Shown: positions 33,141-56,600 of the stretch, one piece after another
Numbering within the stretch: the stretch's first letter is position 1
Layout: every line of letters starts with the position of its first letter
DNA from: Haliotis rufescens
Taxonomy: Eukaryota
Assembly: GCF_023055435.1 (NCBI RefSeq)
Contig: NW_025964392.1
Span: 434,001-498,000 of the forward strand
DNA: 64,000 nt
Direction: 5' to 3'
The notes under the pieces: model-generated
Database searches by the model: none
What the model was told of the DNA's origin: nothing
The model's input: the letters and a program-made list of their open reading frames with translations, nothing else
Position numbers and translations under genes: made by a program

Positions 33141-33768
33141 GGTGGTAGTGATTATGTTTCACCCTCTTGGCTCCCCACCCACCATGGAGTATCAACAAGG
33201 ACGATGCCATACACCTGTGGGCCTCCGACAGGTGACACCAAGGATACCAAGAGGGTATACTCAAGCAGAAGCATCAAAAAATGTTCCACCGGATTGGCCC
33301 ATGAGCCACCGCCTTCTGGGCATTATGACTCTAGGCAAACATAGCAATGTTCAAGTAATTCTTGATTTTATAATTTCAAACAATAGATGTCTACACGAAA
33401 ATGAGTGTAACAGGAGATGGTTCTATTAGTTAAAGAACATCTGAAGTCAAATTGATCAGTACAATAAATTGAAATATAGCTCATGACCACCGAAATTGTG
33501 CAAATGAAATTAAACGCACAGGGCATGGCATGACCAGCCGATTGATAGGACCGGGCCCATCCTACCACCCGTCTAGGCGAAGTAAGGGTCGAAGTGGTGT
33601 ATTGGGCAAAGGAACGCTATTCCTGGAACCATTGCCCTCAACCACCAGACTCCCGTCCTCCGCCGACACAGGGACGCAACCCACGGCAAACAGGTTGCCC
33701 ATTTTAGTCGCCTCATACGACCAGCAATGGGAGGCTGTGGAAATATTCTGCCCCGGTTCCACACGGGG

Positions 33769-33826
33769 GAAGAGCGATTAGCGTTACCCAGCACTCACCA
33801 CGAGGAGGTTGCTCTTCACGAGTGCC
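33769..33826 (-). ncRNA. Minimal HDV-like self-cleaving ribozyme at the LINE 5' end
   Basis: GGCACUC-GU-GAAGAGC-A-ACC-UCCUCGU-GGU-GAGUGCU-GG-GUAAC-GCUAAUC-GCUCUUC gives P1 (with G1-U wobble), P2, P3, L3, P1.1 and a J4/2 C; G1 abuts the TSD. Confidence 0.88.
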
Positions 33827-33924: not shown

Positions 33925-36900
33925 GGAAACAAAACTTTAACAAGGCTGATTTACTGGCTGTGTTTTGTTCACAACACCCTGATTTCAACGTCAGAAACAT
34001 CAGAGATATTTTGGAAAACTGACTGACATGGTGTGTGGTTTGCCACATATAAGGACAATACCTTTGTTAAAATGTTAAAAATATGCAAATGGGCTACAAG
34101 TCCACCAGCTTTAATTCTTATGACAGACAAGTCATAACCTGAAGCATTCCTTGGTTGCATGCAACTGTGAAAAACCAGTATGTGTCCCGCTTCTTTTCCA
34201 ATTATGGGAAAGTGCTAAGCGTGGAGTTTGTAATTGAAGACATGGATGGAGTTGCCATGTTCACAGGAGTAAGAAACGTGACAATGGAGAAAGACGAGAG
34301 CGCCAAGAAGATTAAGCCATACATAAAATTTGGAGGGAATTCTTATCACGCTTCTTTCCTGATTATGGGAAAGTTCTGAGTGTTGAATATGAACTGAAGA
34401 CGTGGAGGGAGTTCCCATGGTCACTGGAGTGCGAAATGTAACCATGGAAATTGATGAAAACTCAAAAGAAATCATGCCCTACTTTGTCAAATTGGGAGGG
34501 AAGGCAATGAGTGAGTGAGTATGCTCCATAGGGAGTCACTTTGCCTTAAATGTTATCGGAAAGGTCACACAAGGGCACAATAGAATAGAATGAGAGAACT
34601 GCAAATGGCTGAGGAAAGGTTGATGGAATTGTGTTTGAAATGTTATAGGAAAGGTCACACAAGGGCACAATGTGCAGGGGTTTGGAATAGGAATAAAGTC
34701 AGAAATGGCTGAGGAAAGGTTAAAGGAAATGAGGGTGAGGGAGGAAAGGGAGAAAAAAGAAAGGGAACAGAAGGAGATGGAGAGCGTGGAGAGAGAAACT
34801 TTGGACGAGAGTGACGATTCATTAGATATTAATTACAGTGAAAATGCTAAGGGGGAGATGGATTATACGGGTGGTGAAAAGGAGGGGAGGGAGTGTGTGG
34901 CACCAGCAGTCCCAGGAGTTCTTTGCTGACATCAGTCAGACTGATTTTCCAAATCTAGAAAGGGGCAGGTCTCAACAAAAAAAAGGAAAGAAGGGGAGGA
35001 AAAATAGTGGGTCACCGGTGAATGGGAAAAGACCAAGGCAATCCAGTCATGTTTCCCAGAGCGTGTCTGAGGCTGCCCGAGCAGCCATCTTGCCAGCCTC
35101 CCAGTCAAGGTCAAGGGAATCCAGCACGGCACGGCTCAATGACACCTGAGTTGGGTCAATCAACAGAGCCAAACGATAACGAACTATGCTACGCCCCCGG
35201 ACTATGAGACTGAATTGCAAATCAAATTTTGCTACTTATTTATAAGGAGTGCTTTTGTGTATACATTGTTTTACATTAGCTGTATTTCTTTTAAAAAAAC
35301 CAAGCAACAACAACAAACATGTTTAATTTTGTAACAATTAATTGTAATGGGCTTATTGAACAGCAAACTAAAAGTAATATATTGTCTAAAAAATTTAATT
35401 CAGGCATTGATTTTCTATTTCTGCAGGAGACTGACATATATAATTTGAATTTAGCAAAATTTTATGAACTAAATTTCAGGGAAATGGGTTTTGGGCCTTT
35501 GGTACCAATGTCAGTAGAGGAGTTGGTATCATTATTAATTCAAGAATTGATTTTAAGGTAGAGTATTTAATTTCGATAAAGAAGGAAGATATGTTGTAAT
35601 AGATGGAAAGATAAATGAAACAAAAATAAGATTAATAAATATTTATGCACCTAATTTCAAGACATATCTTAATATTTAGTAACTAACAAATTAATGGTTT
35701 TAGGGGCTGATTTTAACTGTATTTGTAATTTGAAATTTGATAAAATAGGAGGTAATTAAAAAAAAGCAATCAACAAGGGGCTAATATTATTGACAAGTGG
35801 GTCTCCGTTGCCTGGCGTAGTTCTACTAGTGGTGGGTCCCGGCTTGACTGGTTCTATCTCTCCTCCAACCTCCTATCTGCTGTCGACTCTATGACAATTA
35901 CCCCATGCTGTTTTTCTGATCACGATTACGTAGTGGTAAGTCTTAGAGATTTTGAAGGCATAAATTTTGGGCCATCATATTGGAAGTGTAATAACTCTAT
36001 TTTGGATATAGCTTTTAAAAAATTATTTGCGTCATTTTGTACCAGTAACGTCCCTGCTTTAAAAGAAATAACTCTAGACTGGTGGGACGATTTTAAAATT
36101 AAAATTCAGAATTTTATTAAACTTATACTCAAAATGCGTAATGAATCTCGGTCAGCCCACCGCAAAAAAATAGAATTCCAATATAAAAATTTATGTCATG
36201 CTGAAATCTTGCCGTCCTGGGTTGTATATTGATCAAACTGTAGAAATCAAAAAACAAATTTAAGATTTGGAATTGAACAAATGTATCCGATCTCAGGATA
36301 AGGAGTTAGAATTAGGAGAAAAACCTTCTAGTTATTTTTTCCGTAAGGAAGTAAAGAGAGGACAATTAAAATCAATTAATGCAATTTCGGACTCTTCTTG
36401 AAAAATAGTCAAAACCTCTCAAGATATCATTGTGGTTTTCGTTAAATACTATTCAGAACTTTTGGCAGCCGATCCCATTGATGAAGAAATTAGCAATTTC
36501 TTGATGATTTACCTGTTTCGGACTCACAAGAAGGTGACATTACAAAAGACGAAATTTTAGGCGCCCTTAAGGCAATGGGGACTGATAAGTGACCAGGTCC
36601 AGACGGTCTTACCAAGAAGTTTTATGTGTTTACTTTTGATGTTGTCGGTGCTGTCTTACTTCGTCTTGTCAATCTGTTTTTCGGAAGGCTCTTTGCCTAA
36701 TTCGTCAAACAAATCTTATATTACTCTTCTATGTAAGGATGTCAAAAATGCCACTAATGTACGTAATTGGCACCCAATATCTTTACTAAACGTCGATGTA
36801 AAAATGATTTCCAAATTATTATGCACTCGTTTGGGCAATGTCATAGGTGAAGTGGTCCATCAAGATCAGACTTGTGCTGTTCCCGGAAGGTCTATTCATG

Positions 36901-37335
36901 ATAATTGCCATTTACATCGTAATGTGCTTGATTACGTGGAGGAAAAAAATCTCCCGTGTGCCCTAATTAGTTTAGACCAAGAGAAAGCCTTTGATCGAGT
37001 TTCTCACCAGTTTTTGTTTAAACTTTTACACACTTTTGGCTTCGGTCCAAATTTAAAAAAATGGGTCAAAATTTTATATACGGACATATCCAGCTCAGTC
37101 ATAGTTAATCAGCACATTTCTCTTCCTCTTCCAGAGGGAAACTTTTCGATTTTGGCAGTCCACTGCTGAGCTTATTAGGCGCTCCGTTTTATACAAATCT
37201 GTTTTGAAGGGTGGCCTTGGTGAGATACATATCAAGTCGAAATGACAGTCTTTTCAGTTAAAACATATACAAAAACTTGTTAATGGTTGCTCAGAAACGT
37301 GGACGTTTTTAGCAAAATATTGGTTAGGATTATCC
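33925..37335 (+). mobile_element. Degenerate Tx1-clade LINE (element D)
   Basis: ORF1 remnants (FFSNYGKVLSV...TGVR, CLKCYRKGHTRAQC); ORF2 remnants MFNFVTINCNGL, LQET, FSDH, DQEKAFDRVSH, KGGLG. Confidence 0.85.
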
Positions 37336-38240
37336 TTTCCCCGTGGGGACCTGGGGAAGATGAACAAGAATGTGTCCTCAGCACCCAATTGCTGTCGTAA
37401 AAGGCGACCGATTTGGGCAGCCTGTTTGCTGTGGGCTGCGACCCTGTGTCGGCAGAGGAAGGGATTCTTGTGGTTGAGGGCGACGGAGCCGGCAATAGTG
37501 CTCCTTAGTCCAACACACCACTTCGACCCTAACTTTGCCTAGACGGGTGGTAGGGTGGGCCCGGTCCTATCAATCGGCTGGTCATGTCATGCCCTGTGCA
37601 TACACTTTATTTGCACAAACATTTGGTATTAATGAAATATATTATATTCTAAATGTTTCTACTGTATCTATCAATGTATAAAACCTGCTTAGAGCCCTAT
37701 GCCCAGAAGGCGGTGGCTCATGGGCCAATCTGGTGATGCTTAGCTCCGAATTCTGTACGTCTCCAATTGATGGTCATGGGCAGAACCAGCCTGTCCTGTA
37801 ATTTGGTAGATAGTTCCAGCTTTTCGTGTCTAATTTGCTGGAGTATACCACCCCTTTATCCCCGGTCTTTGCACCCGGGGGATCCGCTGCAGCATAATTT
37901 ACTGTACTTGTTGACACTCCATGGTGGGTGGGGAAAAGGGGTACCGAATCTTTTTCCTTTTGACATGGCTTCCCAACACCCTAGTTCAAAACGAAGATAC
38001 AAAGAATCTGACAATTCACCTGAAGAAAATACCCCCAACTGATCTGACCATGTTTTTCGAAGCTTGTGACAAAGAACCCATCAAACTGAATCCGTTTGCA
38101 ATCTCAAAAGGTATCGCTGGTATCTGAAGAGAGGTTACACATGTCACCAAGCTTTGATCCGGTTCTCTCCTTGTGGAATGTGCACAGAGACAGCAATCCA
38201 TCAACCTTCTGAAATTGAAAGAGTTTGTTATTATCAAATC
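37336..38240 (+). mobile_element. Nimb-like LINE 5' UTR and ORF1 start, degenerate, lacking the ribozyme
   Basis: Colinear with the reverse complement of ~32900-33770; KLNPFAISKGIAG. Confidence 0.82.
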
Positions 38241-39088
38241 ATTGATGTGTGCAGAGACACAATGACCCTCCCAGATAAAATGATAATCCGTACGGGAGTA
38301 CGCACTGTTCCTATCAGTCTAAATAAAGGGTTATTGATGAGGTGCCACACATTGTAAGGCTAGGGGATGGCATGACCATGCTGCTGCCCCTATGTGCTTG
38401 CGCTGTGGGTTCAAAGGTCACATGAGGAATTCATGCATGGCACACCCAAGTGAATTCTTTAATAAAATACTTCAGTAATACGGGATGCAAAACAAAGCAG
38501 GTGTTGACAAGAGGTCAGAACAGGAGAATAGGGAGGAGTGATTGAATGTGTGAGTTGGGTTTAACGCCGCTTTTAACAGTATTACAGTTATATCGCGGTG
38601 TGTCAGCTTAATGTGGGAGGAAAGCCCGAAGTGATGCAGGTCTAAGACGTTTACCACTTCGGTGAAACCCACGAGCACGGGTATGGTGCTGACAAACCTA
38701 GAAACGTAATCGGTGTGAACCGGGATTCGAACCCACAATCATAGGTTTCTGGCGTGCCCAAGGAACGCAACTCTGCACAGCGAATCGCGGCGCCGTAGAC
38801 GACTGGGCCACACGTTCCCCAGAGAAGAGGGATGACATGTGGCATGATGACAATGAGCCAACAGTGAATGAGGAGGTGATGAATGAGGATGAGGGGGACA
38901 AAGAAAATAAGGTTACTAATGTAAGCGTTCCTGGGGATGTATTTAATCCTGTTCCTAGCACTTCAAGTTTACCTGATTCTCCGGATATTAACAAAGTGGT
39001 TTCAGGGATGAGTAAGGAAGATTCCCAAAATGTGCTTGTAATCCATACTATTGTGGACACCAGCGATGACTCCAGTATCAGAACCATC
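38240..39088 (+). mobile_element. Degenerate Tx1-clade ORF1 fragment (element E), interrupted by a SINE
   Basis: TGVR, DEVPHIVRLGDGMTMLL and the PMCLRCGFKGHMRNSC knuckle align with ORF1 at 48458-49330; acidic tail. Confidence 0.7.
38537..38820 (-). mobile_element. SINE family 1
   Basis: Reverse-complement match to 323-610. Confidence 0.88.
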
Positions 39089-39130
39089 ATCGCTTCTTGG
39101 CCTTTTGGCTAAGATCAAAGTGTAGTATCT
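39089..39130 (+). ncRNA. U2: U2 snRNA 5' fragment (first ~42 nt), non-functional
   Basis: ATCGCTTCTTGGCCTTTTGGCTAAGATCAAAGTGTAGTATCT matches the conserved U2 5' end, including the branch-point recognition sequence GTAGTA. Confidence 0.95.
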
Positions 39131-39768
39131 TGACCGAATTCTCAGGGGATGACGGTGGACTTTTGTGTTGACTCTTGGATTCGTGGATTTGCGGAGGTGA
39201 TTTTATTGTGTGCTCACTTTTTGCAGGTCTTCCAGCTGGTACTGTCACTTTTTAAGTCAGATTAGATTTGACGACAAAACCCCACTGGGACAGGGCTGGC
39301 AGTGATGCGGAGAGTGTGGCGAGTGAGAAGAAACATTTGGAGATTGAAAAAGAGTACCAGAGACAGGAGGGGAGAGAGAACGACATGAGAGAGAGAAAGA
39401 GGTTACCCTCGGGGTAAGGGGATGTCCGGTTACCCTCGGGGTAAGGGGACGTCACGGAAAAGTAGGGGCCTGGTCCAGGGACTCTGGAGATAGGAAGAAA
39501 CGGCGTTCATATTCCTCGCAGACAGTGTCCCCGGAGTCGGAAAGGTGTCCACCAGTGTGAGAGGTGTTGCCCCCATTGATCCCGGCATTGATCACCATCA
39601 CTCTTTTTATGTATAATTTCGTTTCATCACAACCAGGATATGAGCTTTTCCTGGAAGGTGACTATTTATTGTGTGTTTTTCCCCCTCAGGTCTACGGGTG
39701 GGTACAGGTACCTTGAGTACCCGAGGACCTCTAGTGGTCACCCGGCCCTCACATTTCCAGTATGGCAG

Positions 39769-40063
39769 GGGGGCACGGGTGGCCCAGTCGTCTAAGGCGC
39801 CGCGATTCGCTGTGCAGAGTTGCGCCCCTTTGGTACGCTAGAAACCTATGATTGTGGTGGGTTCGAATCCCGGTTCGCCCAAATTATGTTTCTAGGTTTT
39901 TCAGCACCATACCCGTGCTCGTGGGTTTCACCGAAGTGGTAAGACCTGCATCACATCGGGCTTTCCTCTCACATTAAGCTGACACGCCGTGATATAACTG
40001 GAATACTGTTGAAAGCGGCGTTAAACCCAACTCACTCACTCACTCACTCACTCACTCACTCAC
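39769..40063 (+). mobile_element. SINE family 1 inserted at the ORF1 start codon of element A
   Basis: TSD GTATGGCAG (39760-39768 / 40064-40072); long (CACT)n tail. Confidence 0.92.
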
Positions 40064-40789
40064 GTATGGCAGAGACAGCAGCTACTTCAACTGGCGCTGT
40101 CCCAGAAGAATTTTTTGACAATGAGGTCATTGAGAAGACATTGAAGATCACAACACGGTTGAGAGGACTGACTAAAGACCAAGTGTTTTAGGTTCTTTTA
40201 ACCCCAATCAGCTAAAGACAGCATCTGGAAGTAAAAAAATGGGAATGAATACTTTGTAACCTTCAAAGAAAGGAAATATCCGCATTTGTTTTGCAGTGAA
40301 AAGAGTGTGAGGTGTAATGGTGAACTGTATTCTTTCTCGCCTTATGACAGGCAGATAGTAGAACTAAAAATACATTGGCTGCATGGCACCATTGCCGACC
40401 AGTACCTCGTTCATTTCTTTTCCAAATATGGAAAGGTGCTGGGAGTCAGAAGACACCACGAATTCCTAGAAACGGAAAAAATTGAAACAGGTGTTCGATA
40501 TGTTGATCTTCAACTCCACAGTTATGATATGGAAGTCCCCTACATCGTTAAAACGTGGAACAGAACGCTTATTTCAACGGCTGGCAGGCTCTCAATCTGC
40601 TTCAGCTGCAATCGTATTGGACATTTGAGGAGTAGCTGTCCTGATAGGCAACCACAATCTAGGTTTGTAGACCTGGCACCATCTTATGCGAATGCCACTA
40701 GAAACACTTGCAACATCATGATAAGCCATCAATTTCAAGCATTAGTTATGGTGAAGGGCATTTCATTGGTTCCCTTTAGAAAGATGCAT

Positions 40790-40826
<37 letters not shown>

Positions 40827-40834
40827 CGATGATG
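40790..40834. repeat. (GAT)n microsatellite in the acidic region of Tx1 ORF1
   Basis: Seen directly in the sequence. Confidence 0.9.
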
Positions 40835-41096
40835 AAATTGGGTCAGGAGTTGAAAGGAAGGGTGAAGATGATGTGGAAGGGGGAACGGAGGAGGGTGACG
40901 TAGAAAAGGTGGTGTCTCCTGACAAAGAGGTGTCCCGTGACATTGGTGGGTGCAGACGTTCAGTTTTCATAGGATGGTGATGATGCTCTTGCAGGCATGA
41001 GTGAATCCGAGTTACCTCCCCATAACCTTTTAGTAGAGCACTACGCAAAGCCAGAGGTAAATCAAAGGGTAAGGACTCTTCATTGGGGAGCGAGAG

Positions 41097-44000
41097 TGAG
41101 TGAGTGAGTGAGTTAAAGCTTTACATCACATCGGCAATATTTCAGCCATATCGTGACGAGAACATTTATAATACTGACATAGAATAAAACACCTGTCATC
41201 GACGGACAGTAGAACAACTAGCATATCACAGTTTATAAATAAAACTAGTCTAGAACAATTAAAAGAATAACCTATTATTCAACAATACATTATAAAAAAC
41301 GGGCTAGAGATCGCCAGCAACCAAAGTTAGGCCACCTAACTGGGGCCTGTGGGGACTTACAATACTTCTGCTACCTGCATGGCTCCCCAGCAGGATTTAC
41401 ACCATCCCTTCAGCAGCTGGCGATGGTACGCAATTAAGCCATAATTAAAACAAAACAAATATACTACGTTTAAAAACAGTGGTATGAATAAACGTACTTT
41501 CAGGACGTGGTCTTACATATCCTCTCAGGGGGACAATAATTTTACACTACTTCAACCCCCTTTGAGGATACAGCCACTAACCATCTATGTTACTCATTAA
41601 ACACTACCAATATTATAAAAATCAACTATGTACACAATCAAAATTTATCAATAAGTTCTATTTCTTTTAAAAATCCAACAATTAAATGACAACTGATACT
41701 ATTAAAAAGATCCTTTAGAGATGAAGATTTGAAATAGTTATCCCTTGTGATCGCAAAATCAACACAGTCAAGCAGGACATGCTGGACTGTGATTCTTTCA
41801 TCACAAGGGATGCAAAACGGTGGATCCTCACCTTTCAATAGATACTCATGTGTATATCTTGAATGGCCAATACGACATCGTCGGACAATGACCTCTTCAA
41901 ACCTGGACTGACAACCCAAGTAGGTATAACCGATATTTGGTTTTATTGCATGTAATTTATTTATACCCACTTGGGTGTCCCACTTCTTCTGCATTAGATT
42001 TCTGATGTAAGAACGGATAACAGGTTTATAGTCACTGTAGGGAAGAAGAAGTGGTGTCACAGATTTGTTGAGTGCTGCTTTAGCTGCAGCATCAGCCATT
42101 GTGTTGCCTTTTATGCCCACATGACTGGGCAACCAACAAAAGACGATGTCGTATTGGCCAGTTGAAAGATCATTATAAAGTTCTAAAATGTTTAAAATAA
42201 TTGGATGTTTAGAGGAGACTTTTTTCAGTGCCTGAAGGCAAGACAAAGAATCCGAAAAGATGATAAATTGTTTATATGCAGACTGTCGTTGAATGTATTT
42301 TAAGGCTGTAAGAAGAGCATTGGCCTCAGCAGTGAAAATAGAGCTAGTGTCTGGTATTCTAGATGAGATATGTTTTGATCCAACAACAGTGGCACATGCC
42401 ACCTTGCCACCATCCTTGGATCCATCAGTAAAGATTGAACGGTGGGTGTCATATTTATTTCTTAGTTCTACATATTCCTGTTGATATATAAGTTGATTGG
42501 TGTCAGATTTAATAAAACGGGTTAGAGAAACATCTACTTCTGGCCTCACCAGCTGCCAGGGAGGAGAAGACAAGAGACGATATGGTGAGATAATATCAAG
42601 ATCTATATTTGCAGCAATAATATGTGATTTCATCCGAATTCCAAGTGGTGGAATCAGCTTTGTTTTTTTCTGAAACAGCTCTTCATATAGGGGTTGAAAA
42701 ACGGAGTCATAAGCAGGATTAGAGTGTAATTTAGTGATATATTGAAGAGACAATTTAACACGGCGTTGTTTCAAAGGGAGTTCATCAGCCTCGACATAGA
42801 GGCTGTCAACAGGAGAAGTTCTAAAAGCACCAAGACACAGTCTGAGTCCTTGGTGGTGGATTGAATCTAGCTTTTTTAAATTGCTCTCGCAAGCTCCAGC
42901 ATATACAATGGAGCCATAATCTAATTTAGAACGAATCAATGATCTATAAAGGTGAAGGAGGGTTGTCTGATCCCCTCCCCACTTAGAATGCGAGACGACT
43001 TTTAACAGATCTAGGGCCTTCAGGCATTTAGTCTTTAAATATTTGATATGTGGCAAAAACGTCAAATGGTGGTCGAAAATTAATCCCAAAAATTTGGCTT
43101 CTTTAACAACCTTAATTGGAGTGCCATCTAAAGAGAGTTCTGGATCGTTATGGAGTTTATATTTCCGACAGAAATGAATACAATTTGTTTTGGTCTGTGA
43201 AAACTTAAATCCATTCTCAAGACACCATTTAGTAATTTTATTAAGACACAACTGTAACTGTCTTTCAATGGTATGCATATTTTGACCACGACATGAAATA
43301 TTAAAATCATCCACAAACAATGACCCATCTATTGAGTCATTTAATACTTTAGATAAACTATTTATTTTGATGCTAAACAAAGTGACAGACAAAATACTGC
43401 CCTGTGGAACCCCCTGATCCTGATTATAATGATCAGACAGGGTTGATCCAAAACGAACTTGAAATTGTCTGTCAGTTAAAAACTGTGATACAAATTGAGG
43501 CAAGCGGCCTCTTAAACCAAAGTCATGTAAATCTTTTAAAATACCATGCTTCCAAGTGGTATCATAAGCTTTTTCAAGATCGAAAAAGATAGATACAGCA
43601 TGCTGTTTATTTACAAAAGCACTTTTAACAAATGATTCTAAACGAACCAAATGGTCAATTGTACTTCGGTTTTTACGGAAACCACATTGGATGTTACTAA
43701 TCAGATTATTGGTTTCTAAAAACCAAACTAATCGATTATTTACCATGTGTTCCATGGTTTTACAAACACAGCTAGTTAATGAAATAGGTCGATAATTTGA
43801 TGGATCGGTATGATCCCTGCCAGGTTTTGGTATGGGTACAACTATCGCATTTCTCCATGAAGGAGGAAAATGTCCAGTTGTCCATATATGATCAAAAATA
43901 TTCAGTAGCGTTGTAAGACAAGAATCAGGCAAGTGTTTTAAGAGCTGATAATGAATATCATCAGCACCAGTCGCAGTATCATGAGCTTGTGCTAAAGCAG

Positions 44001-44615
44001 TGTGTAGTTCATTTAGTGAAAAAACTTCATTATAATCTTCGCCGTTGTCAGAATTAAAATTAACGTTTTTCTTCTCTTGTTGTTGTTGATACTTCTGAAA
44101 CTTTGGATTATAATTTGACGAAGAAGAATGTTTAGCTAAAGTTTCGCCCAATTTATTAGCAATATCTGATTTTTCCGTCAATAAATTATTGTCATCTTTA
44201 AGATGACGAATGCAAGATTTAGAACCCTTGCCTTTGATTCTTTGGATCATGTTCCATACCTTTGACATAGGCGTGCGTGAATTTATTTTAGAAACATATT
44301 TCTTCCAAGACTGACGTTTATTGTGTTTAAATGTTCGTCGAGCCTTGGCAGAGTTAATTTTCACAGTGTTTAAATTATGTACAGTAGGATGGCGTCGAAA
44401 GTATTTCTCTGCCTTCTTCCTACGCTTCCTAGCTTGTTTGCATTCGTCATTAAACCATGGTTTCCGAATATGTGAGTTCATAGAGGACTTAGGAATAGAT
44501 TCATCAGCTATGTTCTTCAGTATGTCAGAGAATGATTGAATTGGATCAGTGACATCCATGAAAAGGTTTGGTTTCAATTTGTCAATACACATAGTCTGAA
44601 ATAATGGCCAATTAG
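41097..44615 (-). mobile_element. 5'-truncated Nimb-like LINE (second family) with an open RT-RNase H frame (41638-~44615)
   Basis: TSD GGGGAGCGAGAG (41085-41096 / 44616-44627); FVDD, FTDGSK; long 3' UTR and (CACT)n tail. Confidence 0.94.
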
Positions 44616-45049
44616 GGGGAGCGAGAGAGGGCAAGAGGTCGAGTCCCCTTTTCGTAGACACCCATTTTCTCAATCGGGACTAGGGCAAGCCACAGTTATT
44701 TCTGAAAGACACAGAATTTCTCCCAGGGGTGCCCTTAATAAGTTGAGGCCCGAATTACTTAATTCAAAGGTGCCGTCAACCCACCCCAAAATGACGACGC
44801 TATGCCCCCGACTATGAGCAAAGATCAATGGATTCAAACACTCCCTCTTAGGGAGTATTATTTGTGTTTTTTGTTGTTTAAAATGTGTTTTATCTCAATT
44901 GTTTTCTATTACTTTTAGTCACAAACAAACCTCAAATGTTTAATTTTACTTCTATAAATTGTAATGGTTTACTAGATTCTGCAGCCAAAATCAATAATTT
45001 ATCATATAAATTGAAATGCTGGTATTGACTTTCTCTTCCTTCAAGAAAC

Positions 45050-45395
45050 GACCGCCTCCGTGGTCTAGTGGTAGAGCGTCCGCCCGGAGAGCGGTTCGAT
45101 CCCCGGACGCGTCATACTAAAAGACGTTAAAAGATGGTACTTGTTGTTACCCTGTCTGGCGCTCCGCATGAAGGGGCTAAAGCAAGGACTGGTCGGCTAG
45201 GAGTCAGTATACTGTGTCTGAGTGGGGTATTCATGTTAAACTGTGGCATGGTATCTCAGTGGGCTAGTACTATAAATCGGCATCAGTCCGGACTAGTACA
45301 AGCAACCACACACACACACACACGTGCATACACGTCGCTTTATAAGTGCAATAATCTTGGACGCGACGTTAAACCCAATTTCACCTCACCTCACC
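45050..45395 (+). mobile_element. tRNA-derived SINE family 3 (V-domain-like) with (TCACC)n tail
   Basis: A/B boxes, AAAGACGTTAAAAGATGGTACTTG body, (CA)n; TSD TCCTTCAAGAAAC; inserted in the LQET motif of element A ORF2. Confidence 0.85.
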
Positions 45396-46570
45396 TCCTT
45401 CAAGAAACCCATGAAATTTGTAAAGACTTCCTTGTTGATAGACCTAAATTACATTCGGAACGTTCGCCTTTACGAGAAGGTGAAATCACAAAAGTGGAAA
45501 TTCTCAATGCCCTTAAGGCCATGTGTGATAATAAGTCTCCAGGTTCGGACGGGCTTACCGAGGCGTTTTATTTGTATTCTTTTGATGTTCTTGGTGATGT
45601 TCTCTTTGTCTAGGTGCACTTGAAACCACAGACCATCGTTGTGTTTCTTGTCCTTGTGTTATTGTACTGTGGAATATCATTTTTCCTTGGTTACACCAAC
45701 TTTATGAAGTTTGGTCTCAAAAGTGTTATTCTGCAGTAAAGTTGTTTGAGTCTATTGTTACAGACCCTTCAGGTTATCTATCGAAATTTAGTTCTAAACA
45801 ATTTTATAACGCACTTCTTCAAACAGTTGTTGAAAATAAAGTGGAGAGACTATATCCACAATTGAATTTTGGACTTGTTTTGCCTAACCTTCAACACTCC
45901 GTGTGTTAATGTACTGTGGGATACCTTTTTTCCATGGTTGCATCAACTTTCTTCAGGGCTAATAAAAAAATCACATGAAATTATAAAGTTTGGTCTCGCA
46001 CCAAACATCCCAAATTCATATAAAATTTGCTGTTTGTGTATATTTGGTGTCTTTGGCAAAATACAGTATTTGGTAGATTCGGAACATTAATAAATATGAA
46101 CACAAACAGTTAAAAGGGAATGATATTGTGTTGCGTTTTTTGTCACTTCTAAAAGTACGTATTCGGGTCGACTTCTTTCGTCTATCCAGTTCTACATTTG
46201 CCAACTACTGGCTTTCCTCTTCAATTTTCTGTAAAGTCAATGCGGGTGTTTTAACCTTCTTGTTCTAATAACACTGTATTATTATCAATTATTGATTTAT
46301 CAATTATTGTATTATCATGTTACCATTAATAATTATTAAAATAATTAAAGCATATTATGTCCATGTTTAGTTTATGACCCAATGATTGACCCACATTATT
46401 ATAATTTTAGTTCTCAGTTTAGGCATATACATTACATAATATACAAATTCTCTGTTCATCCAAATTAGACCCCCATCTGATGACCCCATTTGCCCTATAT
46501 TTAAATGCTTGTATATATGAATATGTAATGTTGTGTATATATATGTTAACATATAATAGTTTTATTTTAG

Positions 46571-46613
<43 letters not shown>

Positions 46614-46904
46614 TATTAATATAAAGTGTACATAAAATCAACATTATTGTACATTTTTACCAGTATATATATATGTCCCCTACTTTGTCTCCCCATTCCC
46701 ACTTTATTAAATTTGTGTATATATATAATTGTGGTTCTACGTTTTACGTTTGTGACATTTCCTCTTTACTTTGAATTGTTATGGCCACTACTCCGACCAC
46801 TGTGAGACTTTATTTTATTTAGGAGTAGTGGCCCTACTGCTGTCCAAATGTGTAGTTTCTTTTCCATGTGAATAAATTTATTACAAAAAAAAGAGTATCT
46901 GTTC

Positions 46905-48005
46905 CTGGAGCTACATTGGAGGACAACTCTGGATTGATCTTGTGTTTCTGTTCCCTGGATTCTTGGAGGAAGTGGTAACTATATTGTGTGACTGACTAAC
47001 TTTCTTCTCTTTACAGATCGACGGGTGGGCCTACCACAGTTGTAAAACTGTGGTAGTAGACCTTCAGTGGTCACCCCCCATTTATTCCTGTCTTTTCGCC
47101 GCCATGGCACTCGCTGTGGACCAGTGCGACAGGGACCCAGGCATCGCCCCACGTACCATATCAGAGCGCAATCAAAGGTGAGAGGATTCTCAAGAGAGGC
47201 CTTATTTTATGCCATTCAGAAAGCTTATCGCTGGCATTTCCGTTAAAAACATTTTTTCAATCTGGAATACTGAACAGAACGGAACATGGTTTATAACGTT
47301 TCATGATCAAAGGAGAGTCAAAGCTTTGTTAGATGCAGGATCAGTTCCTTTTATAGATGGTTTCATTCAATTCAGCCATTACACAAAAAAGGTAACATTG
47401 TTACGAGTTCATTGGCTACATGAAGACGTCAGAGACAGTTTCGTTGCAAAACATTTCAGCAGGTATTTTTGTCACGTTGTCATTAATATCTATTATAATA
47501 ATTAAAGCATCATATGTCCTTTTTTAGTGTACCGACCCAATGATTGACCCCAATTGCCCCACATTATTATCTATTAATTCACAGTTTTGATATAGTACGT
47601 AAAACAATCTTTGTACATCAAAATTAGGCCCCCTCTGATGACCCCATTTGCCCTGTATTTAAATGCTTGTATATATGGATATGTAATGTTGTATATATAT
47701 ATATATATTGACATATAATGGTTATTTTAGAATTGTATATATATCAAGATAAAGTGTAAATAAAATCAACATTTGTACATGATTACAAGTATGTCCCTAA
47801 CTTTGTCTCCCCATCCCCACTTTATTTAACTAGTATTTACGTTTTACTTGTTTGTGACGTTTCCTCTTCATTTTGAACTGACATGGCCACTACTCCGACC
47901 ACTGTGATACTTTATTTTATTTAGGAGTAGTGGTCTTATTGCTGTCCAAATCTGTATTATATTTTCCATTTTCATGTGAATAAATTTATTATATATATAC
48001 AAAAA
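46905..48005 (+). mobile_element. Keno-like element B, ~1.1 kb internally deleted copy
   Basis: 5' leader, then ORF1 5' part (RVHWLHEDV) joined to a 3' UTR similar to element A; bounded by AGTATCTGTTC and AGTATC. Confidence 0.82.
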
Positions 48006-48010
48006 GTATC

Positions 48011-49830
48011 GACTTCAAGAAAGCAGTTGGATTACAGTGGATATACATGTGTATGTGCTTTTTCTTGGACCCAGGGTGACGAGTCATTGTGTGATTTTAC
48101 TCTTTTCCCTTCAGGTATACGAGTGGGTGCAGGTACCTTGTGTACCTGAAGACCTTCAGTGGTCGCCCCTCACCTTCCGAGCATGGCAGAGGCAGGAGCG
48201 ATGTGTACTGGCGCTGTACCGCAGCACTTCTTTGACAAGGAGGCTATCCACAACACCCTGAGGATCTCTTCCCGTATGCGAGGACTAACGAATGAACAAG
48301 TGTTTCAGGTACTTTTGACATCCATTGAAACGGTTACTGCCAAAGATATTAGTTCAATCTGGAAATCTAAAAATGGGAATGACTATTTCGTCACCTTCAA
48401 GGAACATAAATATGTTCATCTGTTCAGCTGTATGAATAGTGTAAACTTTTATGGGCAGTGGTATACTTTCTCCCCCCCTATGACAGTCAAATCATTGAAC
48501 TTAAAATCCATTGGTTGCATGGCACCATTGGTAACCAGTACTTGGTGCACTTCTTCTCAAAATATGGGAAAGTGTTAGGAGTGCGTAGGCACAAAGAATT
48601 CCTAGACAATGAACCAATTGAAACTGGTATTCGATACGTTGATCTACAACTCCAAAGCTATGACACTGACCTCCCATACATTGTCAAGATGGGTAAGCGC
48701 ATGTCAATGCTCATTTCTACTTCTGGCAGATTGCCAATATGTTTCAACTGCAATCGTATTGGACACTTGCGGAGTGCCTGTCCTGACAGACAGCCACCTT
48801 CCAGGTTCACAGTCGTGTCAGACACATATGCAAAAGCTGCAAACATTGGGTTGCGAGACCAGGACGCAGCATCCATTACAAGCATGAGTGAGGTAGAGGG
48901 CGTGGCGCCTTTTATTGGCCCGCTTCCTAAAGAAGCATTTGATGACAATGAAATGGAGGTCAAAGGTGAAGGGAAGGGTGAAGGTGTTTTCGAAGGGAGA
49001 GGAGAGAATCCTTCTGTGGAAAAGGAGGTTTCAACAAACAATGAGGTACCCTGTGACATTGGAGATGGAGAGGTTCAATTCTCACAAGATGGCGATGATG
49101 CTATAAGTGTAATTAGTGATCATGATTTTTCTCCCCCTTACCCTTTACCACAGTCCAAAGGAAATCCAGAGGCAAGTCTAACGGTAAAGACACTTCAAGG
49201 GGTAGTAAAAGAGGCTCCGAGGTGGAATCCCCTTCTAGGAGGCACCCCTTTTCCCAGTGTGGTCCAGGACAAGCTGCAGTTATTTCAGAAAGTCAGAGAA
49301 CGTCTCCCAGGGGTGCACTTAAAAAGTTGAGAGCTGGTGAAGAGGCCCCAATGACCTAATTTAAAGGTGCCTTTCAAATTACTCCCAAAATGACGACGCT
49401 ACGCCCCAGACTATGAATATAGAACAACAGAATCAAACACTCTCCCTGGCAGTAATAATCAAGGATCGTGTACATTTTATTTTAGATCAATTTAGGTTTG
49501 ATGTAGATGTGAGGTATTTATTATTAGATTGTAGTATAAATGAGACTAGGATTCGATTAATATTTATGCTCCTAACAATTCGGTAGATAGGGTGATATTT
49601 TTCCAAAATATTTCAAAACATTTTGTGACTAATGGACTTTTAATTATGGGAGGGGATTTTAATTGTGTTTGTGATATCCAACTTGATAAAGTAAGTGGGA
49701 ACGTGAGAGGTAATCAACAAGGCGCGGTTCTTATTGGACAATGGGTTTCTGACAATTCTCTTACTGACATATTTCGTTCTTTATTTCCAGACTTGGTGAT
49801 GGTGTCTCGGCGTAATGCTGCTTTGACAAG
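48011..49830 (+). mobile_element. Keno-like element C: 5' leader, frameshifted ORF1 (48183-49330) and endonuclease remnant
   Basis: ORF1 with CFNCNRIGHLRSAC knuckle; NIYAPN and MGGDFNC endonuclease motifs. Confidence 0.87.
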
Positions 49831-49929
49831 TGAGCAACTTCTGGTGTGTCAGTAATTGGCTCAGCCTGAACCTGGTTTTAACAGGCTGATCTGAGTTTAC
49901 CCATGTTAAGTTAGTCTGACACGTTTGTC

Positions 49930-51426
49930 TGTTTGTTCGTTTGTTGATTAACGCCGCACTCCAGCTATATGACGGCGGTCTGTAAATGACCGAGTCTGGA
50001 CCAGACAATCCAGTGATTGACATCCTGAGCATCGATCCACGCAATTGAGTGAGTGAGTTAAGCTTTAACGTCACATCGGCAATATTTTAGCCATATTGTG
50101 ACGAGAAGTACATTAATAATACTTATACTGAGTCAAATTAAAAACTTCACATTTTTAAAAGTAATCCCATATATGATATACAATGGACAAATGTATCAGA
50201 GAAGGTAATTTTAAACATTAATGTCCAAAGAAGGATTTTAATTAACGGTGGTAACCATTGTTTGTTCCAAGCACCTATGGTATTCGCTAATAACATCAAC
50301 AGTTTAAATCATAAGTCCCAAGCACGAGAATCTGATGGCACACAAGTTCAGTAGCGTGTATGGCCACCATGTGCGTTGACAACTGCCTCCGCATGGACCT
50401 TGTGATGCTTGTGAACACATGATTGGGAAGACGACGCCATTGTTGCTGCTAAATGGTGCCAAGATCTTGCAAATTCTGTGGTTGGTTCTGGAGAGTGCGC
50501 AGGGAGACCTTGACAGCCAGTCCAGTCCATGGAAGATCAAACCAGGTCCATGTGCTGCCATAAAAGCAGAAGTTCTGGTGCCAGTACCTGGTTGCGGTAA
50601 GCAGTAGCGTTGAGGTTGCCACGGATGACAAGAAGCCTGGAACGTGCATTGCCACAGAATGCACCCCGCACCATGACACTTCCGCCTCGAAATCTGTCAA
50701 CTTCCTGTACACTGGGAGTAACGTTCATGACGGCGCCTCCACAACCTCGCCCTTCCATCAGCAAATTGAAGATTAAATCGGGATTCATCACTGAAGACGA
50801 CTTGATTCCAATTCCTCTGAGTCCATCGTAAGTGTCGCTGTGCCCACAATTGACGTTGACGTTGACGTTGAATTAGAATCGGCCCGCAGTACGGCCGTCG
50901 TGCTTGAAGGTGAGCAGTTCTCAGACGGTTTCGAACAGTTTGCGCACTCAGTCTACCCCTTAACAGTTCATTTCTGATTGACGTAGCCGCCAAAAATCGG
51001 TTACGGAGGTGACATAAGACAATCTGCCGATCCTCTACATGTGACGTCACACGTGGTCGACCTGCCGAGCGGTGGTACCCGTTTGCCGTAGACGCGTCTG
51101 TAAATCATAAACAGTCCGTTGACTACAACCCATCGTCCTTGCGATTTCAGCTACGGATGGTCCCGTCAGCAACATGCCGATGGCACGTTCACGTTGGACA
51201 TTTGACAGGCGTGGCATGACAAATGGCCGTAAAGACTTTTGTTTTCTTGTGTTTTTCTTTTTTTGTTGAGGAAGATCTCCACGCAATTGGGATCAATGAC
51301 ATGCATCAACCAAGTCAGCGAGCCTGACCACCCAATCCCGTTAGTAGCCTTTCACGACAAGCATAGTCACCTTAACGCAAGCATGGGTTGCTGAAGACCT
51401 ATTCTACCCCGGATCTTCACGGGTCA
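49930..51426 (-). mobile_element. Short non-tRNA retroposon (Nimb-5'UTR-like head, (AAAC)n tail), split by an insertion at 50048-51277
   Basis: Head GACCCGTGAAGATCCGGGGTAGAATAGG; tail GCGGCGTTAATCAACAAAC; other copies at ~58905-59180 and ~61057-61160. Confidence 0.78.
50348..51217 (-). pseudogene. Tc1/mariner transposase pseudogene (frameshifted), no recognisable TIRs
   Basis: MPRLS...RAIGML, TVRNRL, VVFSDESRF, GGSVMV, AHGGHTRY* motifs. Confidence 0.9.
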
Positions 51427-53697: not shown

Positions 53698-56600
53698 CTA
53701 TATTTTATCATAGAGCTTGATTTCCTTTAAATACGCTAAAATCAAGTGATTAGAAACTGTGGTAAAAAGTTCAGATAAGGTACGAACATTATCATAAAAA
53801 CGTTGCCTGACAAGTGCAAAATCAACACATTCCAGCAGAATGTGCTTCATAGTAAGAGGGCTATGGCAAGGTATACAAAAAGGTGGATCTTCACCCTTCA
53901 ATAAAAATGAATGTGTACAATAACTGTGGCCAATGCGGCACCGCTGCAAAACAACTTCATCATGACGATATAAACCAGAATGGGCGTGACCACCAATCAG
54001 TGGTTTGATAGCATGAAGTTTGTTCATAGTCTTGGTATTCCAACTTTTTTGCCAATGGTCATTCACATATTGTCTGATGGAAGGTTTTAGATCAGAATAT
54101 GGGAAGTTTGTGTTGGAAATTGGTTTATTAAGAGCAGCTTTTGCCGAAGAATCTGCTTTACAGTTACCACTGATGCCAACATGACTGGGCAGCCAACAAA
54201 AAATTATATCTTTTCCAGCTACGGATAAATTGAGATGACACCTTAAAATTTCAGCTAAAAATGGATGATCCACTTTTCGATTTTTGATGGCCTGTAAACA
54301 GGACAAACTATCAGATAATATGAGAAAACTGCTTTTAGAAGACTGTTCAATATATTGCAAAGCTAATAATATAGCCTGAGCTTCTGCCGTAAATATCGAA
54401 CTTCCGTCAGTTATACGCATAGACACTGTATAATTGTTAGCAACAGCTGCAGCAGACACCTTTTCATCATCTTTTGAACCATCAGTGTAAATACTTGTAT
54501 AAGAGGAATATCGGTTCTTCAGTTCATGAAATTCTTGTTGATAAAATAATTGATTAGTGTCAGACTTCTTCAGGTTCGCTAATTCTAAATTAACAGCAGG
54601 TTGTATCGATTGCCAAGGAGGCATTTCTGAGATTTTGTATTCAGCAATGGCAGAGAGATTTAAATGAGCATCCTTGATATGGGATTGCATGCGAATTCCA
54701 AGTGGTGGGATTGTGTTTGGATTTCTTATATATAAATGCTGGTATGGAGCATTGAAGATATTGTTAAATGCTGGATTAGAAGGATGAGAGCAGAGTTTAG
54801 TGATATATTGTAATGCCAGTTTTATTCGTCTTAAGCAAAGACTGGGTTCATTGGCTTCCACATATAGACTTTCAATTGGCGATGTCCTAAATGCTCCAAG
54901 ACACAACCGAAGACCCTGATTGTGAATAGTGTCAAGGACTTGAATGTATGATTTACGAGCTGAGCCATAAATGAAGCAGCCGTAATCAAGTTTAGACCTT
55001 ATCAAAGTTCTATAGAGATGTAATAGTGTTTCTCTATCACCACCCCACCTAGTATTTGACACTACCTTTAAAATGTCAAGCGCTTTCAAACATCTAGCTT
55101 TAAGATTTTTAATGTGGGGTATAAATGATAACTTTTGATCAAAGGTAATACCTAAAAACTTGGTTTCTTTGACCACTTTTATTGGAGTATTATTTAAAGT
55201 CAATTCAGGATCTTTATGCAGTTTCCGTTTATTGCAAAAATGAACACAGCAGGTTTTAGTTTTGGAAAACTTAAAACCATTTTCTAAGGCCCATTTCTGT
55301 ATTTTATTGAGACAAAGCTGTAACTGTCTCTCAATGCTATTCATATTTGCACCACAGCATGAAACATTAAAATCGTCAACAAACAAGGAACCATCAATAT
55401 TTTCATTTAAAACTTGAGCAAGACTGTTGATTTTAATGCTAAAAAGTGTCACTGATAAAATACTGCCCTGAGGGACCCCCATTTCCTGATCATATATCTC
55501 GGACAATGTGGATCCAACTCTAACTTTAAATTTTCTATCTTCTAAAAAGCGAGTGATGAAATCAGGCATACGGCCACGTATACCCATGTCGTGGAGATCT
55601 TTTAATATACCATACTTCCACGTGGTATCGTAAGCCTTCTCAAGATCAAAAAAGATCGACACAACATGTTGCTTGTTTACAAAGCCATTCCGTACAAATG
55701 ATTCCAATCGGACAAGATGATCGATGGTGCTCCTGTTGTGTCTAAAACCACACTGAATGTCTGTGATCAGATTATTTGATTCAAGAAACCAAACGAGACG
55801 CCGGTTAATCATCCGTTCCATGGTTTTACAGAGACAACTTGTCAGAGCAATAGGTCTGTAATTAGAAGAATCTGTGTGATCTTTACCAGGTTTAGGCACA
55901 GGTATTACAGTAGCCTCATGCCAGGAAGGAGGGAAGTTACCATTTTCCCATATACTATTAAATATGGATAAAAGGGTTAAAAGAGAAGTCTCAGGAAGAT
56001 GTTTCAAAAATTGATAATGTACGTCATCTGGACCAGAAGCTGTATCATGAGCCTTGTTCAAAGCCTCTTGTAACTCAGTCAAGGAAAAGGATTCATTATA
56101 ATCCTCTGCATTATCAGACCGAAAATTCAGAGTTTTCCTTTCCTGCTGATTTTGAAATTTTTGAAATTTTGGGTCATAGTTGCTAGAGGAGGAATTTTGG
56201 CTGAACGTTTCTGCCAACTTATTAGCAATATCCTGTTTTGATGTCAATACATCATGATTAGATTGTAGATGCTGAATATTGCTCTGTGACCCCTTTCCTT
56301 TTATCTTTCTTATCATATTCCATACTTTATTAAGGGGTGTACGAGAATTTATTTTTGAAACAAACTTTTTCCAGCTTGAACGTCTATTTTGTTTAATTGT
56401 TCTACGAGCCTTTGCTCTTGACATTCTTAAGCAGTTTAAATTATTGGCAGTTGGGTGTTTATTAAACACTCTTTCAGACTTTTTCCTATTTTTCCGAGCT
56501 TTTCTACAATCGTCATTATACCATGGTGTTTTTACATGTGGATTTGTCGAGGTCTTAGGAATAGTTTCTGTGGCAATGTTGATTAATTTATCCGAAAATG

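What the first reader, a model, noticed from the sequence alone, without database searches (positions are those of the whole stretch)
39089..49830. Head-to-tail array of U2-targeting Tx1 (Keno-like) LINEs punctuated by the U2 target motif
Seen: U2(1-42) ending AGTATCT, then elements A0/A, polyA + AGTATCTGTTC (46894-46904, the continuation of U2), element B, A-tail + AGTATC (48005-48010), then element C. All are on the + strand and mutually diverged. Known: Keno elements of the Tx1 clade insert specifically into U2 genes near this position. Inference: different subfamilies hit the same site in succession, each new copy landing next to the U2 head and pushing older ones downstream, which leaves a chronological record of insertions.
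Basis: partly seen in the sequence, partly recalled or inferred. Interest (0 to 1): 0.85.

Follow-up and report, generated by a model that had tools for sequence, protein, structure and literature searches.

The report
U2-gene-targeting LINE cluster in abalone
This stretch is a decayed head-to-tail cluster of jumping genes (LINEs) that insert at one exact spot in the U2 spliceosomal RNA gene, a known lifestyle now documented in a mollusc; the claimed record of insertion order cannot be read from it.

Summary
Window 39089-39130 is native U2 nt 1-42. Four + strand copies of one LINE family follow (A0, A, B, C). They are separated by A-tail + U2 nt 36-46 (46894-46904) and A-tail + U2 nt 36-41 (48005-48010).

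The family has a CCHC ORF1 and an ORF2 with APE endonuclease, RT and zf-RVT. It is strictly U2-specific:
- All 13 independent 3' ends I could read join at U2 nt 35/36.
- Eight run on through the rest of U2. One more (L064) follows U2 only to about nt 70.
- The A-tail/U2 junction occurs 44 times in the 1.33-Gb genome: 43 on the contig that holds the U2 array and 1 beside another U2 gene.
- Relatives at 28-43% identity in metagenome contigs carry the same U2 flanks.

So "Keno-like, U2-targeting" is supported. Formal placement in the Tx1 clade could not be tested, because no named reference sequences were available.

The claimed chronological stacking is not supported. The spacer logic fits growth in either direction, and a codon-position age test shows no gradient. 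A0 and A are joined without a target motif, and C is truncated. The U2 head is promoterless: it starts exactly at +1 against another LINE's ORF1, so it is probably an RNA-borne leader rather than a resident gene.

This is a new member of a known kind. First-stage notes on this same window had already flagged the head, the 5' leader and the RNA junction.

The parts
34074..37340 (+). Further copy (Y) of the same U2-targeting family: ORF1 remnant, then ORF2 APE and RT. It is cut upstream by a young antisense LINE and downstream by other repeats.
   Evidence: tblastn with ORF1/ORF2 of intact genomic copies; RVT_1 hit on 36624-37169
37730..39088 (+). 3'-truncated, ORF1-bearing LINE fragment (Z) that abuts U2 nt +1. 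Its 5' part resembles the RNase H-bearing (Nimb/I-like) LINEs of the window. It has a CCHC knuckle at about 38386-38436 and an antisense SINE at about 38550-38815. Its last 273 nt are unique in the genome and end with AGTATCAGAACCATC.
   Evidence: similarities; unique in genome; sequence at the junction
39089..39130 (+). U2 snRNA nt 1-42 (head). It is promoterless, with one mismatch to the native gene.
   Evidence: Rfam alignment; native U2 and its upstream spacer differ from the window's flank
39131..39245 (+). A0: a 5' UTR fragment of one family copy. Its start is a degenerate version of the TAGCCAAA-type start.
   Evidence: comparison with the 5' UTRs of L057/L052, L062, L065, L072
39246..39619 (.). 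Unassigned filler between A0 and A, containing a 27-nt tandem duplication. There is no A-tail or U2 motif here.
39620..46893 (+). Element A: partial 5' UTR, ORF1 (from 40066, with stops and frameshifts), start of APE, start of RT, ORF2 C-terminal remnant, 3' UTR (about 46100-46884) and A-tail. Most of APE and RT is deleted.
39770..40063 (+). SINE nested in A just after its ORF1 start codon, flanked by a GTATGGCAG duplication.
   Evidence: read directly from the sequence
41086..44625 (-). 5'-truncated RNase H-bearing LINE (Nimb/I-like) nested in A.
   Evidence: Pfam RVT_1 + RNase_H; 62% identity to the ORF2 of the intact LINE at 53698-57384
45051..45399 (+). Second SINE nested in A (in the APE start), flanked by a CTTCAAGAAAC duplication.
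   Evidence: read directly from the sequence; tblastn gap
46894..46904 (+). U2 nt 36-46 (AGTATCTGTTC): target-site remnant between A and B.
46905..48004 (+). Element B: internally deleted copy with 5' UTR, ORF1 start (ATG 47104, to about 47470), 3' UTR and a short A-tail.
48005..48010 (+). U2 nt 36-41 (AGTATC): target-site remnant between B and C.
48011..49825 (+). Element C: 5' UTR, ORF1 (ATG 48184; CCHC; one frameshift) and the first part of the ORF2 APE domain. It is then truncated.
47014..47085 (+). Conserved 5' UTR module: a polypyrimidine-CAG motif followed by a predicted three-way junction, just upstream of the ORF1 start. It is also present at 39687-39750 (A) and 48112-48172 (C).
   Evidence: The fold is predicted in at least 5 of 10 copies whose hairpin sequences differ.

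Best explanation
The stretch is a decayed, rearranged head-to-tail cluster of an abalone LINE family that integrates by target-primed reverse transcription at a single site in the U2 snRNA gene.

How each copy inserts (inferred from the junctions):
- The element's APE-type endonuclease nicks the antisense strand between U2 nt 35 and 36.
- The A-rich tail of the RNA is reverse-transcribed from that nick, so every 3' end reads A-tail + AGTATCTG....
- The second-strand break falls a few bases downstream, so the 5' junction varies (nt 41, 42, 43, 46).
- This duplicates U2 nt 36-4x. The AGTATC(TGTTC) motifs between copies are these duplicated target bases.

How clusters arise: both half-sites left by an insertion keep AGTATC and can be hit again. 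Recombination within the U2 array also reshuffles occupied units.

How the elements are transcribed (inferred): probably as read-through from the U2 promoter, so their RNA starts with U2 nt 1-4x. The 42-nt head in this window begins exactly at +1 against another LINE's ORF1 and has no promoter. It is most likely such an RNA-borne leader, placed here by an off-target or template-switch event, not a resident U2 gene.

Shown: the target specificity, the junction anatomy, the domain content and the genome-wide confinement. Inferred: the nick position, co-transcription and the origin of the head. The order of the insertions is not recoverable.
For: - 3' junctions: all 13 independent copies I could read have an A-tail joined to (A)GTATCT. 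8 continue through native U2 to about nt 192, 1 (L064) follows U2 only to about nt 70, and 4 continue into the next element's 5' UTR after U2 nt 36-41/42/43/46.
- Two copies have the native U2 head, with the native upstream spacer, at their 5' end.
- Genome-wide, every hit of the element's 5' part and of its 3' UTR lies on contig C614 (470-1021 kb) or at C588:963 kb.
- The A-tail + U2(36-57) pattern has 44 hits. 43 are on C614 and 1 is beside a U2 on C594. The reversed control has 0.
- C614 holds the 1169-bp U2 tandem array.
- Domains: APE + RVT_1, zf-RVT and a CCHC ORF1. The best solved relative is human L1 ORF2p at E = 1.7e-86, against 1e-22 for R2.
- Conservation: 9 of 80 metagenome loci encoding relatives (30-43% identity) are flanked by U2 on the element's strand. 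Their 3' junction is at nt 36-39 and their 5' junction is variable. They fall in at least 4 deep lineages of the tree, including the starred clade that holds the abalone copies.
- Head origin: the flank differs from the native spacer, the junction is exactly at +1, and AGTATC lies 15 nt upstream.
- Published precedent: Keno-related Tx1 families carry U2 heads at their 5' ends, and co-transcription with the target is discussed for such elements (PMC4494074).
Against:
- No second copy of the putative 15-nt off-target duplication exists after an A-tail anywhere in the genome. The array's 3' end is missing from the window.
- The published Keno 3' flank begins TCTGTTC (nt 39; PMC6136364, PMC4640811). 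That is 3-4 nt downstream of the junction seen here.
- Much of the copy number in the live array is a roughly 3.0-kb [U2 + 1.84-kb deleted element] unit repeated periodically. Recombination, not only reinsertion, therefore shapes these clusters.
Confidence: 0.8

Rival explanations
1. One reading: every new copy inserts at the nick site in the U2 head (the upstream half-site). The youngest copy therefore lies next to the head, older ones are pushed downstream, and the array is a chronological record.
For: - The head (nt 1-42) keeps 35 nt of genuine U2 upstream of the nick, which makes it the better-preserved half-site at this ectopic place.
- If each RNA carries its own U2 leader, the spacers 36-46 and 36-41 are the remnants of earlier heads, which fits the order C, then B, then A (reasoning).
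Against: - Without the leader assumption, the genuine U2 nt 42-46 upstream of B cannot arise from a head that ended at nt 41 before C.
- The copy next to the head (A0) is the most destroyed one, and A carries three nested insertions and large deletions, while B and C carry none.
- The estimated neutral decay of A and C is alike, about 2.5% against 2.8%.
- A0|A lacks any junction motif, so the series is interrupted.
Confidence: 0.3
2. Opposite polarity: new copies insert into the downstream half-site (A-tail + U2 nt 36 onward). The oldest copy then lies next to the head and the youngest next to the U2 tail.
For: - Every spacer (36-46, 36-41, and elsewhere 36-42 and 36-43) is genuine U2 sequence, as simple target-site duplication in an intact downstream remnant would give. 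No extra assumption is needed.
- Visible damage decreases from A0 to A to B and C.
Against: - At this locus no U2 tail exists, and the head looks RNA-borne, so an intact downstream U2 remnant may never have been present here.
- The damage gradient rests on four copies and on deletions that can happen at any age.
- The substitution test shows no gradient.
Confidence: 0.3
3. The juxtapositions were made by DNA recombination rather than by reinsertion. Unequal crossing-over, or deletion between the short AGTATC repeats of neighbouring occupied U2 units, removed the U2 body and spacer between elements that had originally inserted into separate units.
For: - The live array shows strong recombinational amplification: A-tail/U2 junctions recur at about 2.9-3.1 kb spacing, which is a composite unit repeated many times.
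- Four loci carry identical ORF layouts about 7-10 kb apart.
- The window's block is clearly rearranged.
Against: - It needs precise deletions on only 6-11 bp of homology, at least twice in this block and again at three other loci (L057, L062, L068).
- Tandem insertion is already documented for the other U2-specific LINE, Utopia-1_NVit (PMC4640811).
Confidence: 0.15

Closest known systems
Keno (U2 snRNA gene-specific LINEs of the Tx1 clade; Kojima & Fujiwara 2004, as cited in PMC4640811, PMC4494074 and PMC6136364)
   Same: - An APE-type endonuclease upstream of RT.
- Sense-orientation insertion into the 5' third of U2, with a precise 3' junction.
- Several lineages within animals.
- Relatives that left U2 still carry U2 heads (PMC4494074).
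   Different: - The 3' flank here starts at (A)GTATCTGTTC, 3-4 nt upstream of the TCTGTTC reported for KenoDr1. One metagenome relative, L091, has the published junction.
- The papers I could search report Keno from vertebrates, lancelet and hydra, not from molluscs.
- Clustering with Keno reference RTs is untested.
Utopia (U2-specific LINEs with a restriction-like endonuclease; PMC4640811)
   Same: - Essentially the same target site in U2.
- A precise 3' boundary and a variable 5' boundary.
- Occasional tandem insertions, and several lineages kept in one U2 array.
   Different: Utopia has a PD-(D/E)xK endonuclease downstream of RT and no APE. Here APE is present and the ORF2 resembles L1 ORF2p.
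R1/R2 of 28S rDNA (target co-transcribed, site-specific LINEs)
   Same: - They live inside a tandem multicopy RNA gene.
- They probably depend on the host gene's promoter.
- Occupied units accumulate and decay at the array's edge.
   Different: - The target here is a Pol II snRNA gene.
- Rfam finds no HDV-like ribozyme in this family's 5' UTR. A different conserved junction structure is present instead.

Membership tests
Keno / U2-specific Tx1-clade LINE | Specific insertion into U2 snRNA genes at one site in sense orientation, with a precise 3' junction | tested here: met
   - 13 of 13 readable 3' ends join at U2 nt 35/36.
- The junction pattern has 44 genome-wide hits, all at U2 loci.
- The junction is offset 3-4 nt from the published KenoDr1 flank (PMC6136364).
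Keno / U2-specific Tx1-clade LINE | Apurinic/apyrimidinic-like endonuclease N-terminal to the reverse transcriptase | tested here: met
   Pfam Exo_endo_phos at residues 14-237 and RVT_1 from residue 528 in open frames of intact genomic copies. The same order is seen in the 69%-identical full-length P0001.
Keno / U2-specific Tx1-clade LINE | RT phylogeny places the element inside the Tx1 clade, with the Keno reference families | not testable with these tools
   - No Repbase or named Tx1/Keno sequences were available.
- Indirect only: the nearest solved protein is L1 ORF2p.
- Relatives with U2, U5 and U1 neighbours occur, as published for Tx1.
- L1-Tx1 is reported as ubiquitous in molluscs (PMC10294476).
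Utopia (RLE-type U2-specific LINE) | Restriction-like (PD-(D/E)xK) endonuclease C-terminal to RT, and no APE domain | tested here: not met
   An APE domain is present at the N-terminus. The C-terminal region carries zf-RVT only.
Co-transcribed LINEs processed by an HDV-like ribozyme (R2 type) | An HDV-like self-cleaving ribozyme at the 5' end of the element | tested here: not met
   Rfam at E up to 5 finds no ribozyme family in 38900-50200 or at the 5' ends in L057, L062, L065 and L072. The only weak HDV-like hit (L039, 27.5 bits) lies about 450 nt upstream of a Nimb-like 5' region, so I take it to belong to that unrelated LINE.
L1 clade in the strict sense | No sequence-specific target; ORF1 of the coiled-coil/RRM/CTD type without a CCHC knuckle | tested here: not met
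   The target is strictly U2. ORF1 carries a zf-CCHC motif with borderline Pfam scores.

The most novel reading that the evidence does not exclude
The U2 leader carried by read-through transcripts works as a portable landing pad. An off-target or template-switched insertion plants U2 nt 1-42, which includes the nick site, in non-U2 DNA. Later copies of several sublineages then home to it, so a target-specific LINE seeds its own new target and builds arrays outside the gene family it depends on.
Probability: 0.3. Interest if true: 0.6.

Novelty: new member of a known kind. Interest (0 to 1): 0.4.

Why it matters
- It extends U2-specific, APE-type LINEs to a mollusc. Metagenome relatives suggest that this target choice is old and spread over several deep lineages.
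- It gives a well-resolved natural example of a site-specific LINE interacting with a small tandem Pol II gene family. The genome holds 92 intact targets and at least 44 occupied ones. An internally deleted derivative is amplified together with its U2 unit, and decayed copies stretch over about 450 kb beside the live array.
- Practically, it warns against reading insertion order from the position of copies in such arrays.

Tried and rejected
I used only the loci already held and coordinate-only searches.
- The first metagenome scan, with a single protein, found nothing. The second, with an alignment, worked.
Expression, RNA 5' ends and splicing of the intron-like motif therefore remain untested.
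- The idea that the 5' UTR is a diverged U2 body (Sm site, stem-loops IIa and IV) is rejected for now. The U2 covariance model gives only head-level scores on the chimeric junctions (37.5-49.4 bits).
- A canonical HDV-like or hammerhead ribozyme in the 5' UTR is not found by Rfam.
- The off-target model predicts a second copy of AGTATCAGAACCATC after an A-tail. None was found.
- The Atlas search returned no clade names.
- The mixture-model tree did not finish in time. The tree I report uses LG+G4 with a quick search, so its starred branches deserve less trust.
- The age test by unique substitutions per codon position was underpowered and showed no difference between A and C.
Full report
**What is in the window.**

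The Rfam U2 model hits 39089-39233 at 49.4 bits. The alignment shows that only positions 1-42 are real U2. The genome's own U2 genes read the same through nt 42, including an extra A before GTGTAGT, with one mismatch.

After nt 42 the sequence becomes the 5' UTR of a LINE.
- A0 (39131-39245) is only a 5' UTR fragment.
- About 375 nt of unassigned sequence follow it. There is no A-tail and no target motif before A.
- A (39620-46893) has ORF1 with stops and frameshifts. It keeps only the first residues of the APE domain, a short piece of early RT, a C-terminal remnant and the 3' UTR.
- Three nested insertions sit in A: two SINEs with visible duplications, and an antisense RNase H-bearing LINE.
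- After A's tail come U2 nt 36-46 (46894-46904).
- B follows. It is a 1.1-kb internally deleted copy.
- Then come U2 nt 36-41 (48005-48010).
- C follows, with 5' UTR, ORF1 and part of APE. It breaks off at about 49825.

No U2 tail occurs anywhere in the window. These are the only two junctions of this kind in the array.

A and C are 68-77% identical in ORF1. A and B are about 74% identical in the 3' UTR. One more + strand copy of the family lies at 34074-37340.

**Is the motif target sequence or part of the element?**

I read the 3' ends of 13 independent copies: two in the window and 11 in other loci of the same genome. Every one is an A-rich tail joined to (A)GTATCT.
- In eight copies the sequence runs on through the rest of native U2.
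- In one more (L064) it follows U2 only to about nt 70.
- In four it runs on for U2 nt 36-41, 36-42, 36-43 or 36-46 and then into the 5' UTR of another copy.

Two copies show the other side: the native U2 upstream spacer, the U2 head, then the element's 5' UTR.

**Genome-wide picture.**

The window is C614:434001-498000 of a 1.33-Gb assembly. Earlier notes of this scan call the organism an abalone.
- All matches to C's first 1.8 kb and to A's 3' UTR lie on C614 between 470 and 1021 kb, plus one place on C588.
- C614 carries the 1169-bp U2 tandem array on the minus strand from about 925 kb onward, with interruptions. Two plus-strand heads lie at 473 and 701 kb.
- The pattern A-tail + U2 nt 36-57 has 44 matches in the genome and none for its reversed control. 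43 are on C614 (579-1075 kb) and one is on C594, 2.9 kb from an intact U2.
- Intact target sites number 92 and heads 111.
- Many occupied units recur at 2.9-3.1 kb spacing. This is a U2 unit plus a 1.84-kb internally deleted element (loci L065, L066), evidently amplified as a composite repeat.
- Long open frames in the live array (for example 696 and 338 residues in L046) show that some copies are still intact.

**What the element is.**

Open frames of intact copies carry Exo_endo_phos (APE), then RVT_1. The last 300 residues before the 3' UTR carry zf-RVT. ORF1 has a CCHC knuckle.

The nearest solved protein is human L1 ORF2p, at E = 1.7e-86 over residues 4-855. R2 proteins reach 1e-22 on the RT alone.

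Database relatives are ORF2 proteins of about 1150 residues. They include hits from the limpet Patella caerulea, a land snail and a characiform fish.

**Is U2 targeting conserved in relatives?**

A profile scan of metagenome contigs returned 80 loci. Nine of them carry U2 sequence on the element's strand.
- Both flanks: L076, L091, L109, L111.
- Head only: L077, L085, L100.
- Tail only: L079.
- An intact U2 just upstream: L087.

The 3' junction always lies at nt 36-39. It reads as an A-tail or ...AGGA followed by GTATCTGTTC, and in L091 as an A-tail followed by TCTGTTC, which is the published Keno flank. The 5' junction varies (nt 26, 27, 42, 51).

In a quick LG+G4 tree rooted on the window's unrelated LINEs, these loci fall in at least four deep lineages. 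One is the starred 19-row clade that holds the abalone copies and the Patella protein. Other lineages sit beside U5 (L080) or U1 (L074) genes. The literature lists such targets for the Tx1 clade (PMC4494074).

I could not place the family against named Tx1, Keno or L1 reference RTs, so clade membership stays inferred.

**Comparison with the literature.**
- Keno is the APE-type, U2-specific Tx1 lineage, known from vertebrates, lancelet and hydra.
- Utopia is an RLE-type lineage that hits the same site and is occasionally found in tandem (PMC4640811).
- KenoDr1's 3' flank is given as TCTGTTCTTATCAG... (PMC6136364). That is 3-4 nt downstream of the junction here.
- Tx1-type LINEs are reported as ubiquitous in molluscs (PMC10294476).
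- I found no paper describing a U2-specific one in molluscs.

**The U2 head is not a resident gene.**

Native heads are preceded by the array spacer. Here the head is preceded, exactly at nt +1, by a + strand, 3'-truncated, ORF1-bearing LINE fragment. The last 273 nt of that fragment are unique in the genome.

A breakpoint exactly at the transcription start points to an RNA end. There are two ways to get this:
- an off-target insertion of a U2-promoter read-through transcript. AGTATC lies 15 nt upstream of the junction, as a pseudo-target with a 15-nt duplication would give;
- a template switch at the 5' end of such a transcript.

Neither is proven. No second copy of that 15-mer follows an A-tail anywhere, and the array's 3' end is lost. 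Keno-related Tx1 families with U2 heads at their 5' ends are on record (PMC4494074).

**Order of insertion.**

After one insertion, two half-sites keep AGTATC.
- If new copies use the downstream half-site, every spacer is a plain duplication of genuine U2 bases, and the oldest copy lies next to the head.
- If they use the head, the genuine nt 42-46 before B must come from B's own U2 leader, and the youngest copy lies next to the head.

Both schemes reproduce the observed 1-42 | 36-46 | 36-41 series.

Visible damage is greatest at the head end (A0, A). For substitutions, I used A's sister copy L035 and C's sister copy L032.
- A has 13 unique changes in 353 sites: 7 at codon positions 1+2 and 6 at position 3.
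- C has 52 unique changes in 604 sites: 20 at positions 1+2 and 32 at position 3.
- After allowing for selected changes, this gives similar neutral decay of roughly 2.5% and 2.8%.

With four copies, one missing junction and a truncated end, no chronology can be read. Recombination, which is clearly active in this array, is a further way to juxtapose copies.

**Other features of the elements.**

All 5' UTRs share a polypyrimidine-CAG motif followed by GTCTACG. A predicted three-way junction sits just before the ORF1 start, and its central hairpin differs in sequence between copies while still pairing. RNAalifold proposes an alternative conserved helix, so a pseudoknot is possible. Rfam sees no known ribozyme there.

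In one sublineage the element begins TAGCCAAA. Together with the last U2 bases, this is the exact reverse complement of U2 nt 16-27, which would form a 12-bp hairpin in a read-through transcript. A relative at 33% identity (L085) has the same start with one G-U change.

**Limits.**

**Verdict.**

This is a real and well-supported U2-specific LINE cluster: a new member of a known kind, of moderate interest. The chronological reading is not supported.

Noticed in passing
L065:335-345(-), L072:2405-2420, L062 and L057 internal junctions; metagenome locus L085:50-65: In one sublineage the element starts TAGCCAAA. With the last four U2 bases this is the exact reverse complement of U2 nt 16-27, which would give a 12-bp hairpin in a U2 read-through transcript. 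A relative at 33% identity keeps the pairing with one G-U change. Window A0 has a degenerate version.
   Followed up: partly
window 39687-39750, 47014-47085, 48112-48172; L052:1102-1165, L059:150-213(-), L070:52-185(-): A conserved polyY-CAG + GTCTACG motif, followed by a three-way junction, lies 10-25 nt before the ORF1 start. The central hairpin differs in sequence between copies but stays paired. L070 has the module in three tandem copies. An alternative helix (AGGTCTACG with CGTGTGACCT) suggests a pseudoknot. No Rfam family matches.
   Followed up: partly
G000:C614 about 909-1075 kb (coordinates): A-tail/U2 junctions recur at 2.9-3.1 kb spacing. This is a composite unit (U2 unit + 1.84-kb internally deleted element with a 463-residue open frame) that has apparently been amplified as a higher-order repeat inside the U2 array.
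   Followed up: partly
window 28228-33140(-) and 53698-58588(-): Two nearly identical (99-100% at protein level), intact copies of an RNase H-bearing LINE (ORF1 403 residues, ORF2 1228 residues) flank the cluster. A third, 62%-identical, 5'-truncated copy is nested in element A.
   Followed up: no
metagenome loci L080:2067-2639, L074:47-210, L087:72-263: Relatives of the ORF2 lie just downstream of U5 genes (two copies), a U1 gene and an intact U2 gene. These may be other snRNA-associated target preferences in the same superfamily.
   Followed up: no
metagenome locus L086:10-54: A type I hammerhead ribozyme (43.3 bits, above the gathering score) lies near the start of a contig that encodes a relative from the clade without U2 flanks.
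   Followed up: no
window 33300-33780 and 37340-37720: Two copies of the same repeat in inverted orientation bracket the upstream family copy Y. Their nature (SINE pair or transposon ends) was not determined.
   Followed up: no
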